Assembly: GCA_053919585.1 (NCBI GenBank)
Contig: CM132795.1
DNA from: Euprymna scolopes
Lineage: Eukaryota
Length of the DNA: 64,000 nucleotides
Strand: one strand, 5' to 3'
Below the pieces are notes generated by a model. The model was not told where the DNA came from. It worked only from the letters and a program-made list of their open reading frames with translations, and did not search any database. Below are positions 19,846 to 26,702 of the stretch, piece by piece. Numbering within the stretch: position 1 is the first letter of the stretch; the number at the start of each line of letters is the position of its first letter. Position numbers and translations under genes: made by a program.

Positions 19846-21269
19846 GATATAAATATTGCAGTGACTGAGCAACAATCGTATAAATAATAATCTTAATCAA
19901 TGCCAAGGAGTAATTTCTTTAAAAAGTACCGGATGTGTATATAATATTTCAATTATTTAAAGACAAAAACACATATTTTTCACGGGAGGACGGTGTCATC
20001 CAAAATTTACGCAAACTGATCAAGTAGTTTATTTTTTAAACTAGTAAAATTGAATTGTACGATTTTTCACGATTTTATTACTAAACTGTATTAAACATAA
20101 AACGTTTTCGACCTCTACACTTCGAATCCAGTTGGCTCCCCTTATTATTACATCGGATTTCATCACAACCAACGAAAATATGACTCGATTAGTCGTAAAT
20201 TTTTATTTAATAATAAAGGTAATTGTTTTCTTAATATTTCATGTAGGTTCCGTGCCTAGTAGGTACACTATACATACTTTTGTTTTTGTTCTTTACTTTT
20301 AATTGCGGTTATAGTGAAAATTTAAATAAGTGCTGAGTAGTGTCTTCTCGGAATAATGTAAGATAGATTTCTCTAAAATAATCCTAATTAATATATAAGT
20401 AATATTTTCCAGCATTGTTCGATTAAAATTTTATATTTTGAGCAATGCATTCTGCGAGTAATGGCTTTGGTTTTTGCGATGATAATCGTAAAATTATAAG
20501 AGGAATAACCTTTTTAAAATTAGAATGTTATGGGAGCCATGTATCTAAAAATACAAAGTAATTAACTCTATAAGTATATTTGAAAACTAATTAGGAATTA
20601 AATAACCAGGTGACAGTTTATGTCGTCAAACAAATTAAACCGAAGGAAAACTTATTTTAGTTTTGTATAAGATTAGATCCTGATAGGTATTATTCGATGC
20701 AAAGTCAAGTTTTGGTAATTTAGTACAATCTACATGCTTTAAGATCATTGGCAGAAAACCGGAGACAAAGACTGCCATTCTTGTAAAAATAGGTTTTTAA
20801 ATAGACATGTGCTATTGATATTATTTGGGAAATACAATCTGCAGTAAACCTTACATGAATTACATTGTTACCAATGCAGGTTGAAATAATTGTTATTTAG
20901 AAATTTAAGCATTGCGTAGCTTCAATAAACAATGTCGTATAGAAATATGTAAAAATTAAATTTAACCCGATAGCCCTATATAAAGCACTGCACTTGCCGT
21001 ATAAGCGCCAGTATATTCTAGAAGCGAATAAGATTTCGGTGATTACATCTTGGAAAACTGTCGAACGAAATATTTCTTGAAATAAGTATACATTACAGAA
21101 TCGATATAATTCGGTTACATTACAAAACCTTTATTTTGGCATGGCTAGAAGGTACGATTATGATAGAATTGTAAATGACTATCCTGTTTCTGAGAAACCA
21201 AAGCGACACTTCTCCTTAATGTTCAAATCTCTAACTTATTTTCGCGGAACACCGAACCTGTAAGACAAC

Positions 21270-21270
<1 letters not shown>

Positions 21271-21323
<53 letters not shown>
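21271..21323. repeat. (TA)n microsatellite
   Basis: Direct reading. Confidence 0.95.
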
Positions 21324-21327
<4 letters not shown>

Positions 21328-21410
21328 CACCCAGAACATCCAATATAATTTTGGAATGGTCTGTAGATATGCAAGTAGTTTTACACGGCACTCAAAGATG
21401 CATAATATAG

Positions 21411-21693
21411 TGTTGAGATTATTTCACCAACAAGAAGAGGAGGGATGTAATAAAAGGCAGTAAGGGCTTGCAACGAAATGGTGACGTTGCTTACAATTCA
21501 GGCAAAAGACAGCAAATACTAGAATAATTCAATTCTAAAAGAGGGGTAATAAATTTCGTTGCAAGCCCTTACTGCATTTTCTTACACGACCTCTTGTTGG
21601 TGAAATAATCCCGAAAAATTGCAACGAAACTTTATTACCCTTCTTCTAGAATTGAATTATTCTAGTATTAGCTGTCTTTTGCCTGAATTGTAA
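21411..21693. repeat. Interlocked inverted repeats A-B-A'-B'
   Basis: A 21411-21495; B 21491-21564; A' 21554-21616; B' 21619-21693. Confidence 0.9.
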
Positions 21694-21694
21694 C

Positions 21695-24180
21695 ATGGAG
21701 GATTCAGTCTCTATGGAGGAGCTTGGTCTTAAACGGAGACTTCTGCAAAGAAATGTACTGACTATTCTAGAAGTACTAGAAAAAGAAAAGAGTCCTGAGG
21801 AAGTGCTTTCTCGTTTCAATAGGGAAATTGAGGAATGGATGGAAGAGCTGGAAGCCGTCTCATTTGGTATGGAGGAGATTTATGCTTAAGAAGATGCAGA
21901 GACCCTGGCCAACTTAAGTACTGTCTTCTTTCGCTTTAAATACGATGTCAGATGAAGGTTAAGTTTACTGCGAAAGACTGAGGAAGACGAGACCCACGCA
22001 GCCACCTCGTTCGATGGAGATATTGACTCGTTTACTAATCAAGAGAACCCGGTGACCCCTGATAAGAGAGATCCACCTTCCAAATTGGCAGCTAATCATC
22101 ATTTTCGGTGGAGCCATTTAAAAGAAAGTTGAAGGGACCTCACTTCAACAAAAAATACTTTAAAAAAGACAAAAGGAGTTTTACGGACTTTTGGGGAAAA
22201 ACTTGAAAATTGTGCCAGGTCCATTACATCGGACACGAACAAACTTTATTTCTTAAGATGTTCATTAGAAGGCAGAGCTCTCCAACTGATAGATCACCTT
22301 TCTCCCTCTGTAGAAAGTTACCTGATGGCCCTGAAAATTTTAAAGGGCCAATATGTGGACGAGGAAGAAATAAGAGGTGAGATTATACAGGGAATACTGG
22401 ACTTTCAGTTGAATAATCCTGGGAATCTGGAGAAATTGAAAATTTTTATTGTGAAGACCCAGGCTGATATGTGGGAATTAAGGGATTCATACAATTGCGA
22501 TTTGTATGATGATAGGTCAGCCGGAGCAATTATAATATCGCAAGTGTTGTTAGTGAAGATCCCACCAGCAATAAAAGTAGAACTTCTGCGAATTTCTGGC
22601 AGTTACTATCCCTCATTGTTTGTGCTGTTGAAGGAGACCCCGAGAATAGTCAAACAAGTGCTTGTTGCAAGAACACCTAAGATCACGGTGAAACCTAGGC
22701 CGCAACCTAAGTTTAAGACACCAACTGAATCCTCATCTCTCGAGACCTTCAACACAAATCTGATAAGAGACCAAATGTGTTTTTTGTAAATCGAGTGAAC
22801 ATTTGTCTGACAACTGTAATAATTATACAACCCATGAGGCCAGAATAAGCAGGTGTCGAGAGCCACGCCTCTGCTTTCATTGTATTAAAAAATCCCACTT
22901 AGGAAATATGTGGCCATTGAAGACATCTAAAAAAAGTGTCTTCGTTGTAAATCTAAGGGGAACGTGACTACCATGTGTTCTTCTGTTACTAGTAATATGC
23001 ATATTGATACATGCCTCGCACTAAAGACTGTGATAACGCTTTCCTGTCTCCTATAATAGGAATTATTGTGAAAAAATGGGGATAAGGAAGTAAAAATTAA
23101 CTGCTTGTTAGACACCGGTAGTCAGAGGACTTACCTGGACTATTCAATTAAAAAAAATGGGGTTTGTATTACTGTACACATAGATTCGAAAAAGTTGTCA
23201 AAAAACAAATATATAACAAATAAATGTTATCAAAGGCAAGATAAGTTACTTTTCTACCAAACTGGATATATTTTTCGTGTTTTTATTCAATGTAAGATGT
23301 TTATTCAGCTCGAAAACCATAGTGTTTACCGATGTATTGGAACATTCAAGATGGCGTCTTATTCTCTCTTTAACACGGTAAGTGTGGGATAAGATGTTAT
23401 AAATAAAAAACCGGATAAAATACTGTTAAAAACTCGCTCAATATATGTTACCGTGACATAGGTTGACATATATTCGGCGGGTTGTTAATAGTATTTTGTA
23501 TAGTTTTTTTTTATTTATAACACCTTTTTCCATACTTGCGGTGTTAAAGAGGGTGTGAGACGCAATCCTGAATTTTCGAATACATCGGTAAACACTGTTT
23601 TTCGAGCTGAATAAATGTTACATTGAATAAAAACACAAAAAATATATCAAGTTTGGCAGAAAAGTAACTTATCTTGCCTTCGATAACATTTATTAGTTAT
23701 ATATTTGTTTTTTGACAACTTTTTCGAATCTGTGTACAGTAATACGAAATCAAAAAATGAATTGCCTCTCCTTAGCAAAGGATAGATCTATTGATGTGAA
23801 AACTTTTTTAGGCACAAATCCTAAAATGTTTAAAGAAATCTTTTTAAATTTAAATTTGTTCACTGGCAAAACCAATACCCTTCCAATTCTTGCGACAAAA
23901 TTGTGTCATATAATCTGGAAAGCCTCCCTCAGATGCTTAGGAATCTGAAGAATTGTAGATTGGCCGCTCATTTTTATGACAAAAAACCTTATTGACTATA
24001 GATGGGTTGCTAGGGAGTGACGCAATCTAGTACTTAGAACCCCTAAAGGTGATACGTTGTATGTATAGAGCTGCTTTAGAAACACAAAAAGGATTGATAT
24101 CATTCGGAAATGTTAACCCTTTTCTCTTTGAACGCCAGATCAAGAAACAAAAGTAAATTATGCAGAAGTTTTGGCTAGAA
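21695..24180 (+). pseudogene. BEL/Pao Gag-protease, disrupted
   Basis: DUF1759-like TSDTNKLYFLRCSLEGRALQLIDHLSPSVESYLMALKILKGQY; decayed Cys/His knuckles at ~22.78-22.98 kb; aspartic protease LLDTGSQRTYL. The protease is interrupted at 23160-23751 and resumes ...IDVKTFLG. Confidence 0.75.
23160..23751. mobile_element. Foldback element (~590 bp, long TIRs) inserted in the BEL protease
   Basis: GTATTACTGTACAC..AGATTCGAAAAAGTTGTCAAAAAACAAATATATAAC mirrored at the right end; arms ~260 bp; TSD AAAAAATG (8-9 bp). Confidence 0.85.
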
Positions 24181-24189
24181 CCCCACAAC

Positions 24190-24445
24190 TTATTGAGTCT
24201 CAGGAAGAACCTTGAATCTAGCCGACTCTTTTAAAGATAAGATAAAACCAGGAGATATAATACTCATTAAAAATCCTCTGAAGACTAGGTCTTTTTGGTC
24301 CCTAGGTAAATCCTCGAAATAATCCGAGGAAGTGATAATTTGGTATGCATGGTGAAAGTGAAGAAAGGGGATGGAGCTATAGACATGCATTCCATCAAAC
24401 CTCTTTCCTCTAGAATTCTCTCAACAGCCAGAAGAACCTGACCCA
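24190..24445 (+). pseudogene. BEL/Pao integrase C-terminal region (DUF5641-like)
   Basis: LLSLRK...IKPGDIILIKNPLKTRSFWSLGK / LEIIRGSDNLVCMVKVKKGDG..HSIK / LFPLE, with frameshifts. Confidence 0.75.
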
Positions 24446-24450
24446 CTGTC

Positions 24451-24702
24451 ATGGAACCATTAAGCTCTCAAGATGTGAGCCTAGACCCACAAAGGAGACA
24501 GAGCACGATAATTTGGATCTGTCCAGCCTGCAACAGATCAGAAGATACTAGACCAATGATAGCATGTGATACATGCGATGATTGGTTTCATTTCGACTGT
24601 GTGGGCCTAATAGAAGCACCGCCAGAAAATGAACAGTGGTGCTGTTATAACTGCAATCCTCGAGATTTAACAAGGGGTAGACCCAGCCTATCAAGCGTCT
24701 AA
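24451..24702 (+). CDS. PHD finger (C4HC3), TAF3-like, within the retroelement; probably the C-terminal end of the decayed Pol
   Basis: IWICPACNRSEDTRPMIACDTCDDWFHFDCVGLIEAPPENEQWCCYNC retains all eight zinc ligands. Confidence 0.8.
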   Translation: MEPLSSQDVSLDPQRRQSTIIWICPACNRSEDTRPMIACDTCDDWFHFDCVGLIEAPPENEQWCCYNCNPRDLTRGRPSLSSV

Positions 24703-24754
24703 ACTGACTGTTTTATTCCCCTTAATCAGGAATTCGTTTTTTATTTGTGGGGAA

Positions 24755-25171
24755 TGTGTGTAAGAATTGAAATTGATTTGAGTTACCAGGAGTGGATCAG
24801 AGGGAATAAGACACTGAACTGCTGTTTGCCGTTACTGAGAAACTGGGTGTCTATTTCCTACTAAGTTAAATAGACATTCTAATCACGTTGGAAATCACGT
24901 TGGAATTCTCGCCACTGAGAGTTAGTATGTATAAAAGGAGTTGTCTCATTACGGGTTAGTGATAAGTTAAGAACCTAGTTACCTTGCTTGCTAGTCGGTT
25001 GGCGTCTCTTAGACTGATTACCTCGTTACTGTTGTTCCGCAAACGTTACCTGTTAATCGTTATCTTTACAAGGAAAGAAAAAACTTCTTGTAAGCAACGT
25101 CACCATTTCGTTGCAAGCCCTTACTGCCTTTTCTTACACCCCCTCTTCTCGTTGGTGAAATAATCCCGACA
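24755..25171 (+). repeat. 3' LTR-like segment of the BEL element
   Basis: Follows a GGGGAA PPT; begins TGTGTGTAAG; TATAAAAG near 24930; tandem AATCACGTTGGA; ends ...CCCGACA. Confidence 0.6.
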
Positions 25172-25331
25172 ATAGTCCTTCTAAAAGAACCGTCAAATGC
25201 TGACAGGTTCTCCTGCTACATCCGTAACGATTATGCAAGAGAGTAGCTGGAGAGGAGAGCTATCTATGTACACATGGACACCCGACATAAACCTGAAGAG
25301 ATGGCAAGCTTCGTTCAAGAAGTAGCAATCG

Positions 25332-25367
<36 letters not shown>

Positions 25368-26702
25368 CATATGCGTCGTGATTTAAGTGGGTGATAGCGA
25401 TATGTATGTCTTTGTATAGCAAACTAATTTGACACAAAATGAAAGTTTGAAATTTTAGAAAAAATGCGTAAATATTTTTCAAATAAAATTATTTGACAAA
25501 AAAGTGCAACCATTCCAGTATTGTTTTCATGTAACTATAAGAATACAGGGTAAAATTGCTAAGAGAAAATCCAATATAATATTGTTCATTGATGCAAAAT
25601 ATATCGGTATCTATCTCCTTGCATTTCTTTTCTTTTGCGAAAAAAAAAAGAAAAACGAACTCTACCTGACATTTGCATTCAGTTCAAATCTTGTTTTGCA
25701 TCAATGATCCGTAAATATTCTGATCATGCAAATATCTACATTTTCTATCCTAATGGACAAACAAGCCACGTATTCTTATTACGATTATTTACGGTTTACC
25801 TTCCTTATTTGTTTCGCACTCGATTATTTGACCTTGGATGTTGAATAAATGCTGTGTTAAGTCATGACAAATTCCTCTCTAGAAAATCTACACGTATTAA
25901 AATTGTACAGTTTGGCTTCAAATATTCTTTCTAAAACCCTTTGTCTGAAACTAGGCTTAATATTCTAATATCGTGAAAAACGCTAATTTTGAATATTGGT
26001 TGATTTTATTTATAAGGCATACATTTTGAAAGCAATTCTCATAGAGACTTAAGGTTTAGACAATGGATCCAATGTTCTAGTTTATATTTTACATCGTGTT
26101 ATTTAATTACAATGAAATGCAAGTTATTTTTAAATAAATTTCAGATGTTTTAAATGTAGATGCGTTTAAAATACTATTTTCGGTGTTTGTTACGAATATA
26201 ATGTCAAGGTTATATGACGGTTTCAAAATACACATGCTTTAATATAAAATTGCAATGATAATTTCCATCGATAACGTGTGATAAACATTCTATTTGTATA
26301 TCATAAAATAGACAAAGTACTTTAGTGTGGATAAGCAGGTAAAGTATTTAAATGTGTGCAATGCATCAGTTTTAGGAGACACGCTTTGAGAACATCATTA
26401 ATTACAAAACGGTATTTACGCCCTTTCATTATTTTTTTTGTTAACACCCGACAACTGGTAACCGAGAACAATAAATAGCAAACAGAAGGAAGTTCGCTTA
26501 TTAGACAATTTTTATGTTCTAGATTTCTTTAATCTCTTTTTGATATATAATAGTGGCTAAGACCTTTCGGCTTTGCATTGTCTCATTAAAGTTAGTATAC
26601 TCGTTCTATCAGATCAGACATTGTAATGATACTGACATTATGACTTAAAATGCGCAAAACATCGACGTTTTAGTTTTGTAGTGCGTCTGTATTTATTGCC
26701 AC

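What the first reader, a model, noticed from the sequence alone, without database searches (positions are those of the whole stretch)
21411..25171. LTR-retrotransposon body inserted between two inverted TGT...ACA ends with a 4-bp TSD
Seen: 21411-21495 is the reverse complement of 25089-25171, and ATAG flanks both sides. The interior is BEL/Pao Gag-PR, integrase tail, PPT and one LTR-like segment. There is no direct-repeat copy of the U3 part (24755-25088) on the left. Hypothesis 1 (inference): the repeat is the element's own R/U5 end, so an aberrant cDNA with two U5 att ends was integrated, giving a retroelement the architecture of a TIR transposon. Hypothesis 2: Ginger-type DNA transposon ends (TGT..ACA TIRs, 4-bp TSD, integrase-like transposase) captured a BEL fragment. 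Either would illustrate an LTR-to-TIR transition.
Basis: partly seen in the sequence, partly recalled or inferred. Interest (0 to 1): 0.8.

Follow-up and report, generated by a model that had tools for sequence, protein, structure and literature searches.

The report
Retrotransposon inserted by two U5 ends
A single dead copy of a common BEL/Pao retrotransposon entered this animal genome with the same LTR tip (U5) at both ends, most likely because its DNA copy was scrambled during reverse transcription; it is a rare one-off fossil, not a new kind of mobile element.

Summary
21411-21496 is the reverse complement of the last 84 nt of the only LTR (24759-25171), and ATAG flanks both sides.

The ATAG is a real 4-bp target duplication. 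The flanks belong to an older repeat, and 8 of 9 paralogues examined read straight through with a single ATAG. Ten solo LTRs of the family have 4-bp duplications.

It reads: inverted U5 end, inverted PBS+leader, a direct 65-nt U5 remnant, then the normal PBS, leader and gag. The blocks join at microhomologies: TTACAA, and an 11-nt U5 motif complementary to the PBS position.

Both junctions, and a private 3.1-kb pol deletion, are unique in the 5.9-Gb genome. The LTR has at least 981 candidate copies, and all 52 examined have normal ends.

Best reading: one aberrant cDNA carrying two U5 ends was integrated once (H1). The formation pathway, a fold-back at the U5/PBS complement plus a template switch, is inferred, not shown.

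The Ginger reading (H2) is rejected. No spread as a TIR element is seen, so this illustrates rather than demonstrates an LTR-to-TIR transition. Short reads were too shallow to confirm the assembly.

The parts
21407..21410 (.). Left copy of the 4-bp target-site duplication ATAG
   Evidence: Eight of 9 paralogues of the host repeat carry a single ATAG at this point.
21411..21496 (-). Inverted copy of the last 84 nt of the LTR (U5 end). It starts exactly at the LTR terminus (TGT = reverse complement of ACA).
   Evidence: 92% over 86 nt, E=4e-30.
21491..21496 (.). Junction J1: 6-nt microhomology TTACAA. It is shared by the LTR (25088-25093, TTGTAA) and the end of the leader (21688-21693, just before the gag ATG).
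   Evidence: The junction is unique in the genome at up to 3 mismatches.
21491..21564 (-). Inverted copy of the PBS-position 11-mer plus the leader (reverse complement of 21619-21693)
   Evidence: (I3, 66 nt, 94%), and (93.4%).
21554..21564 (.). Junction J2: the 11-mer TTTCGTTGCAA. It is at once the reverse complement of the PBS-position 11-mer and the internal U5 motif (25106-25116).
   Evidence: The junction is unique in the genome.
21553..21617 (+). Direct remnant of a 5' LTR: only its last 65 nt (U5 from the 11-mer to the terminus), with U3 and most of R/U5 absent
   Evidence: D1, D3; LTR positions 347-411.
21619..21694 (+). PBS-position 11-mer TTGCAACGAAA (21619-21629) and the leader, with no TGG-type tRNA PBS
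21695..23157 (+). Decayed gag (DUF1759 at 22229-22582, zinc-knuckle region) and the start of the protease, collinear with full-length copies
23160..23751 (.). Later nested insertion: a 592-bp element with long terminal inverted repeats and an 8-bp duplication AAAAAATG. It is not part of the retrotransposon.
   Evidence: I1, I2; absent from full-length copies.
23752..24192 (+). Rest of the protease region, up to the private pol deletion
24188..24192 (.). Junction J3: a 3.1-kb deletion removing RT, RNase H and the integrase core, with ACTTA microhomology
   Evidence: The junction is unique in the genome.
24193..24702 (+). Integrase C-terminal tail with a PHD finger (24520-24654)
   Evidence: Full-length relatives carry DUF5641+PHD in the same place.
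24747..24758 (+). Polypurine-tract side, GTGGGGAATGTG
   Evidence: the same sequence precedes the 3' LTRs of other copies.
24759..25171 (+). The only complete LTR (413 bp, TGT...ACA), in the 3' position
25172..25175 (.). Right copy of the target-site duplication ATAG

Best explanation
The unit 21411-25171 is one insertion of a defective cDNA from an abundant BEL/Pao LTR-retrotransposon family. Both of its termini were U5 ends, and the family's integrase joined both to the target, leaving the usual 4-bp duplication (ATAG).

Shown:
- It was a single insertion with a genuine duplication.
- Both junctions lie exactly at the U5 terminus.
- The inverted block contains only the element's own U5 end and PBS+leader.
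- The blocks join at 6-nt and 11-nt microhomologies.
- The structure is unique in the genome.

Inferred pathway (favoured):
1. Minus-strand strong-stop DNA started at the PBS and copied 84 nt of U5.
2. It then switched at TTACAA to the end of the leader and copied the leader and PBS to the end of the RNase-H-trimmed template.
3. Its 3' end (TTTCGTTGCAA) folded back on the complementary 11-mer inside its own U5 copy and primed on itself.
4. [quoted passage not shown]
5. The finished linear DNA therefore carried an inverted U5 terminus where U3 should be.

The 3.1-kb pol deletion may be a third switch in the same cDNA or a later loss. Lacking a 5' U3 promoter, RT and the integrase core, the copy could not move again and has since decayed.
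For: - Exact terminus. The left end aligns to the LTR end up to its last base in several full-length copies.
- Family behaviour. Ten solo LTRs and the full-length copy L063 have 4-bp duplications.
- Empty sites. Both flanks belong to an older repeat. In 6 paralogues the two flank alignments overlap by exactly 4 nt, and 8 of 9 read ...GCATAAT ATAG TCC... with one ATAG.
- Normal arrangement elsewhere. All other scored copies carry only the direct order U5 end, AAA, TTGCAACGAAA, leader, gag.
- Uniqueness. J1, J2 and J3 each occur once in 5.9 Gb at up to 3 mismatches.
- Microhomology at every junction: 6, 11 and 5 nt.
- Fold-back is feasible. The proposed intermediate 21411-21565, folded as DNA, pairs its 3'-terminal 12 nt with 21467-21478 in the minimum-energy structure (z = -3.3).
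- Age agrees. The internal duplicates are 92-93% alike, the same range as LTR pairs of other old copies (93.5-97.1%). This fits identity at the time of insertion.
- Precedents. [quoted passage not shown] Proviruses with inversions, deletions and asymmetric LTRs from template switching are documented in vivo (PMC9278108).
Against: - A single fossil cannot show the order of events.
- Deletions between short direct repeats in a larger inverted structure would give the same junctions.
- The inverted leader carries the family's 'b' indel variant (GAAA-TTTA) and the forward leader the 'a' variant (GAAACTTTA). The two leaders may therefore come from different templates. That fits co-packaged RNAs or two cDNAs better than a strictly one-molecule fold-back.
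- The three U5 copies share no private variants that would prove a common source.
- The assembly of the 283-bp knot could not be confirmed. Only about 0.33x of each of four Illumina runs was sampled and no long reads were laid.
- I found no published in-vivo case of a U5-U5 integrated element. The prior for this event is therefore unknown.
Confidence: 0.68

Rival explanations
1. Two U5 ends were integrated in one event, but the inverted structure did not arise by RT fold-back. The U5 ends of two separate cDNA molecules were joined to the two sides of the target and their free ends were ligated by host repair, giving a head-to-head dimer. The unstable palindrome then lost most of one arm and its centre through deletions between short direct repeats (TTACAA...TTACAA and TTTCGTTGCAA...TTTCGTTGCAA).
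For: - The reverse complement of the PBS 11-mer and the U5 11-mer are direct repeats in such a dimer, so J2 could be a simple deletion.
- The forward and inverted leaders carry different family variants, a and b. Two source molecules explain this naturally.
- The duplication and the exact termini are explained as well as in the best reading.
Against: - It needs two donor molecules, an end-joining step and at least two later deletions. The best reading needs two switches on one nascent strand.
- No head-to-head U3-U3 junction of this family was found in the genome, though this was an exact-match search only.
- It does not explain why the inverted leader block ends exactly at the PBS.
Confidence: 0.14
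2. A normal element with two LTRs inserted at ATAG. Its 5' LTR was later rebuilt in place by a replication-based, microhomology-mediated rearrangement (FoSTeS/MMBIR type) that copied the element's own U5 end and leader in inverted order.
For: - Microhomology is present at J1 and J2.
- Inverted templated insertions are typical of such repair (established knowledge).
- The duplication would be inherited from the original insertion.
Against: - A third breakpoint would have to fall exactly at the first base of the 5' LTR and exactly at the last base of the copied U5, with only TGT as microhomology.
- A block copied from the element's own leader should carry the same a/b variant, and it does not.
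Confidence: 0.08
3. Two independent insertions of the family, one inverted and one forward, hit the same 4-bp target. Two deletions then removed everything between the kept parts.
For: - The a and b variants in the two leaders are explained.
- The family shows some taste for AT-rich targets.
Against: - The second insertion would have to use exactly the duplicated ATAG next to the first element's end.
- The family's duplications are diverse (AAAC, GCAA, GTAT, CATG and others), so there is no site specificity.
- Two further deletions with precise endpoints are also needed.
Confidence: 0.04
4. Assembly artefact: the left-end knot is a chimeric or palindromic read artefact and the real locus has an ordinary or truncated 5' end.
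For: Junction-spanning reads could not be demonstrated.
Against: - The blocks are 60-90 nt long, far shorter than any read class used for chromosome-scale assembly.
- The copies differ from each other by 7-14%, as expected for old real DNA and not for a fresh artefact.
- The left flank joins the knot at an exact LTR terminus with a matching duplication.
- Sampled reads cover 21468-21634 in all four runs at roughly single-copy depth.
Confidence: 0.04
5. H2 of the first reader: a Ginger-type cut-and-paste DNA transposon whose TIRs captured a BEL fragment.
For: TGT...ACA ends, an ~85-nt inverted repeat and a 4-bp duplication resemble the Ginger features described in PMC2836005.
Against: - The 'TIR' is the U5 terminus of a BEL/Pao LTR with at least 981 candidate copies.
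- The composite is single-copy.
- There is no Gypsy-like DDE transposase. The interior is collinear with BEL/Pao copies.
- A direct U5 remnant plus PBS and leader sits inside the left end.
Confidence: 0.01

Closest known systems
Defective retroviral proviruses with inversions, large deletions or asymmetric LTRs produced by RT template switching (HIV-1; PMC9278108)
   Same: An integrated, replication-dead product of error-prone reverse transcription. It has microhomology junctions, an internal deletion, and an abnormal LTR on one side.
   Different: Here the whole U3-R part of the 5' LTR is replaced by an inverted U5 end, so both integrated termini are U5. The host is an invertebrate BEL/Pao retrotransposon, and the copy is an old germ-line fossil.
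[quoted passage not shown]
   Same: A nascent minus strand whose 3' end pairs with an upstream complement in the same strand and is extended on itself.
   Different: Those products are described as dead ends in vitro. Here the inferred fold-back regenerates a PBS end, could complete the second strand transfer, and was integrated. The hairpin is the U5/PBS complement, not TAR.
Ginger1/Ginger2 DNA transposons (PMC2836005)
   Same: TGTNR-type termini, inverted ends of tens to hundreds of bp, and a 4-bp duplication made by an integrase-type DDE enzyme.
   Different: Ginger elements are multi-copy cut-and-paste families encoding a Gypsy-like transposase. This is a single copy with BEL/Pao gag, protease and integrase-tail remains, its 'TIR' is an LTR tip, and there is no evidence of excision or re-insertion.
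Tf1/Tj1-type self-priming LTR retrotransposons (PMC4600332)
   Same: There is no tRNA-type PBS. An 11-nt stretch just downstream of the 5' LTR is complementary to an upstream stretch of the element's own LTR transcript region.
   Different: In Tf1 the complement is the first 11 nt of the mRNA, and the elements are Ty3/gypsy. Here the complement lies 65 nt before the LTR end, its position relative to the transcript start is unknown, and the family is BEL/Pao.
In-vitro concerted integration with two identical (U5-U5 or U3-U3) viral DNA ends, for example intasome substrates and Ty1-based artificial transposons (own knowledge, not checked here)
   Same: An integrase joins two copies of the same LTR end to a target and gives the normal duplication length.
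   Different: Those are engineered substrates. This would be a natural germ-line event.

Membership tests
BEL/Pao LTR retrotransposons | Gag with the DUF1759 domain | tested here: met
   PF03564 at 22229-22582, E=7.6e-7, above the curated cut-off. Also found in L064.
BEL/Pao LTR retrotransposons | Pol with RT, the Pao-specific Peptidase_A17 region, integrase H2C2 and the DUF5641 tail | tested here: met
   Found in the full-length relatives L063 and L064. In the window copy the RT to integrase-core stretch is deleted.
BEL/Pao LTR retrotransposons | TGT...ACA LTRs and a short duplication of fixed length | tested here: met
   All 52 LTRs examined have conserved ends, and 10 solo LTRs have 4-bp duplications.
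BEL/Pao LTR retrotransposons | Two direct LTRs flanking the body (canonical copy) | tested here: not met
   There is only one full LTR. The left side has an inverted 84-nt U5 end and a direct 65-nt U5 remnant, and no U3 copy exists in the window.
Ginger DNA transposons | Multi-copy family sharing the same TIR pair around its own interior | tested here: not met
   The composite junctions are unique in 5.9 Gb.
Ginger DNA transposons | Encodes a Gypsy-like integrase-derived DDE transposase | tested here: not met
   Only BEL/Pao gag, protease region, integrase tail and PHD are present. The interior is collinear with BEL/Pao copies.
Ginger DNA transposons | TGTNR termini, 40-270-bp TIRs and a 4-bp duplication (PMC2836005) | tested here: met
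   Met in form only. The TIR is an LTR tip.
Tf1-type self-priming retrotransposons | PBS complementary to an upstream stretch of the element's own RNA instead of a tRNA 3' end | tested here: met
   TTTCGTTGCAA in U5 pairs with TTGCAACGAAA 3 nt after the LTR. Each is exact in 19 of 25 canonical 5' ends, and the leader has no TGG.
Tf1-type self-priming retrotransposons | The complementary stretch is the 5' end of the mRNA and is released by RNase H | not tested
A TATA-like box at about 24931 would place the start roughly 145 nt upstream of the 11-mer (sequence reading only).
DIRS-like elements (retroelements with inverted terminal repeats) | Tyrosine recombinase and no target-site duplication | tested here: not met
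   A 4-bp duplication is present. The pol remains are of the integrase type.

The most novel reading that the evidence does not exclude
The U5/PBS 11-nt complement is the family's self-priming device. The same palindrome makes fold-back 'pseudo plus-strand strong-stop' DNAs a recurrent by-product. Their integration through two U5 ends would be a natural route by which an LTR element acquires terminal inverted repeats, the first step toward Ginger-like, integrase-driven TIR transposons.
Probability: 0.1. Interest if true: 0.65.

Novelty: new variant of a known kind. Interest (0 to 1): 0.4.

Why it matters
If the reading is right, this locus is natural germ-line evidence on two points.

First, an LTR-retrotransposon integrase can insert DNA that carries two U5 ends and no U3 end while making its normal duplication. 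To my knowledge this has otherwise been shown with engineered substrates.

Second, it preserves a readable record of where reverse transcription went wrong. The breakpoints single out the U5/PBS complement, which bears on how this BEL/Pao family primes its cDNA.

It does not show a new mobile-element class. It is a single, dead, decayed copy.

Tried and rejected
- Read support. Four Illumina runs of the same species label were laid on 20800-25800. Only about 2 Gb, roughly 0.33x, of each was sampled. Depth over the knot is near single copy in all runs, but no junction-spanning evidence or empty-site joint could be extracted. The output is dominated by the nested high-copy repeat at 23160-23751. 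Not decisive either way.
- Common-source test. I looked for shared private variants among the three U5 copies and found none. The region is too short and too conserved. An apparent excess of rare states in the two left-hand U5 copies comes mostly from a hypervariable poly-C tract, so I dropped it.
- Head-to-head U3-U3 junctions of the family: none found, in an exact-match search only.
- Literature. Searches for in-vivo U5-U5 integrated elements or inverted-LTR retrotransposons found nothing on point. A search for BEL/Pao PBS usage gave no direct statement.
- Ginger reading: rejected (see the membership test).
- DIRS-like inverted-repeat retroelement: rejected because of the duplication and the integrase-type pol.
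- Autointegration product: rejected because it gives circles, not a chromosomal insertion with a duplication (established knowledge).
Full report
**1. The observation**

The sequence and the repeat scan confirm that 21411-21496 is the reverse complement of 25088-25171. The scan reports 55 nt at 96% plus 36 nt at 86%. As one alignment it is 86 nt at 92%, E=4e-30. ATAG lies at 21407-21410 and 25172-25175. No second copy of the U3 part exists anywhere in the 64-kb window.

Two corrections apply.
- By comparison with 52 family LTRs, the LTR runs 24759-25171. It starts TGTAAG, and the internal side reads GTGGGGAATGTG.
- The left end is a four-block knot, not a plain inverted repeat:
  - an inverted U5 end (21411-21496);
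  - an inverted PBS+leader (21491-21564);
  - a direct copy of the last 65 nt of the LTR (21553-21617);
  - then the normal spacer, the PBS-position 11-mer, the leader and the gag ATG (21619-21697).

**2. What the element is**

The LTR has at least 981 candidate copies in the 5.9-Gb genome. The window copy has a gag DUF1759 domain and a C-terminal PHD finger. Full-length relatives of about 6.55 kb carry DUF1759, RVT_1, Peptidase_A17, Integrase_H2C2, DUF5641 and PHD. That is a BEL/Pao element. All full-length copies examined are themselves broken.

Against those copies the window element reads as follows:
- It is collinear from the U5 remnant through gag into the protease region.
- It is interrupted at 23160-23751 by an unrelated element with long inverted ends and an 8-bp duplication.
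- It lacks 3.1 kb of pol (RT, RNase H and the integrase core).
- It resumes in the integrase tail, PHD, PPT and LTR.

The pol deletion has a 5-nt microhomology and is unique in the genome.

**3. Is the ATAG a real target duplication?**

Yes. Ten solo LTRs of the family have 4-bp duplications of varied sequence, and the full-length copy L063 has ATAC.

The flanks of the insertion belong to an older interspersed repeat with at least 592 candidates at about 80% identity. In six paralogues the left-flank and right-flank alignments overlap by exactly four bases. Eight of nine paralogues read ...GCATAAT ATAG TCC... with one ATAG.

The whole of 21411-25171 therefore entered as one piece at a staggered 4-bp cut.

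**4. Is it a family or a one-off?**

Searching the genome with 21395-21700 returned only the window itself as a full-length match. Every other scored copy matched only the direct U5-PBS-leader part, and matched the inverted blocks on the opposite strand at the canonical places.

The two novel junctions each occur once in the genome at up to three mismatches, with zero control hits. In every LTR examined the 84-nt segment is the LTR's own tip. In the 5' LTRs among them it is followed directly by AAA, TTGCAACGAAA and the leader.

This rules out a mobile TIR family and the Ginger reading. Ginger's published features (TIRs of 40-270 bp, TGTNR ends, 4-bp duplications, a Gypsy-like transposase; PMC2836005) are matched in form only.

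**5. The junctions**

- J1 joins the inverted LTR piece to the inverted leader. The shared TTACAA is LTR position 25088-25093 and the last six leader bases before the gag ATG.
- J2 joins the inverted PBS to the direct U5 remnant through TTTCGTTGCAA. This is both the reverse complement of the PBS-position 11-mer and an internal U5 motif. The two halves together form a perfect 16-nt palindrome.
- This U5/PBS complementarity is a family trait. Each 11-mer is exact in 19 of 25 canonical 5' ends, and the 80-nt leader has no TGG-type tRNA PBS.
- That recalls Tf1/Tj1 self-priming (PMC4600332). The position of the RNA start was not tested.

**6. Mechanism**

*What the data require.* A linear DNA with a U5 terminus at each end was joined to the target in one integrase-type event.

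*How that DNA arose is inferred.* My favoured route has four steps:
1. Minus-strand strong-stop DNA, whose 5' end is by nature the U5 terminus, copied 84 nt and then switched at TTACAA to the end of the leader.
2. It copied the leader and PBS to the end of the RNase-H-trimmed RNA.
3. Its 3' 11-mer folded back on the complementary 11-mer in its own U5 copy and extended. This re-created U5 end, AAA and, from the primer, the PBS.
4. Such a strand ends like plus-strand strong-stop DNA. It can make the second strand transfer onto a full-length minus strand, giving exactly the observed order of blocks.

*Supporting observations.*
- The present-day sequence of the proposed intermediate folds with its 3' end paired at the predicted place (z = -3.3).
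- Rearranged proviruses from template switching are known in vivo (PMC9278108).

*A caveat on the templates.* The inverted and forward leaders carry different family indel variants, b and a, each seen in about half of the copies. This suggests two templates. Co-packaged RNAs in this route would fit, and so would two cDNAs.

**7. Rivals**

- A head-to-head dimer integrated by two U5 ends and later trimmed by deletions between the same short repeats would look the same. It shares the core claim.
- Rearrangement of a normal insertion in place needs a third breakpoint exactly at both LTR edges, and it conflicts with the a/b difference.
- Two insertions at the same four bases plus two deletions is very unlikely, given the varied targets.
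- Misassembly is unlikely. The blocks are far shorter than reads, and the copies are 7-14% diverged from each other. It could not be excluded with the shallow read sample.

**8. Age and fate**

The internal duplicates are 92-93% alike. One short pair is 86%, driven by a poly-C tract. LTR pairs of three other copies are 93.5-97.1% alike. The insertion is therefore old, about as old as the older copies compared.

It has no 5' promoter, RT or integrase core, carries a later nested insertion, and no daughter copies exist. It is an evolutionary dead end.

**9. Verdict**

H1 is supported in its core and H2 is rejected. The 'LTR-to-TIR transition' is an illustration, not a demonstrated transition.

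It is an unusual variant of a known kind of object, a defective reverse-transcription product that got integrated. For retroelement specialists it is of moderate interest.

Noticed in passing
window 23160-23751 (duplications 23152-23159 and 23752-23759): A nested 592-bp element with ~120-140-nt terminal inverted repeats and an 8-bp duplication AAAAAATG sits in the protease region. Its ends recruit more than 1000x read depth at ~0.33x sampling, so it belongs to an extremely abundant MITE/foldback-like family. Many reads show inverted and tandem joints within it.
   Followed up: partly
window 21327-21410 + 25176-25332, with (TA)n at 21269-21326 and 25333-25365: The retrotransposon sits inside an older ~240-bp interspersed repeat with at least 592 candidate copies at about 80% identity. 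That repeat is itself bracketed by (TA)n microsatellites.
   Followed up: partly
window 21554-21564, 21619-21629, 25106-25116; loci L032-L060: The family has no TGG-type tRNA primer-binding site. An 11-mer three bases after the 5' LTR is complementary to an 11-mer 65 nt before the LTR end, and each is exact in 19 of 25 canonical 5' ends. This makes it a candidate self-priming BEL/Pao family. The RNA 5' end was not mapped.
   Followed up: partly
window 24520-24654; L063:5896-6579: A PHD finger lies at the very C-terminus of pol, after the DUF5641 integrase tail. It is present in the window copy and in a full-length relative (E about 5e-11), so it is a family feature.
   Followed up: partly
loci L004, L005, L009, L013, L016, L030: Several LTR copies of this family are flanked on both sides by (AT)n. 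This suggests a preference for AT-dinucleotide repeats as targets.
   Followed up: no
G000:C21:94156754-94169600 (L066, L011, L014, L044, L051): Three LTRs about 6.2 kb apart on the same strand, with internal sequence between them. This is a tandem LTR-body-LTR-body-LTR array of the same family.
   Followed up: no
window 21629-21634 versus 21549-21553: The leader shows a one-base indel polymorphism that splits the family about evenly (GAAACTTTA in 10 copies, GAAATTTA in 9). The forward and inverted leader copies in the window differ at exactly this site.
   Followed up: partly
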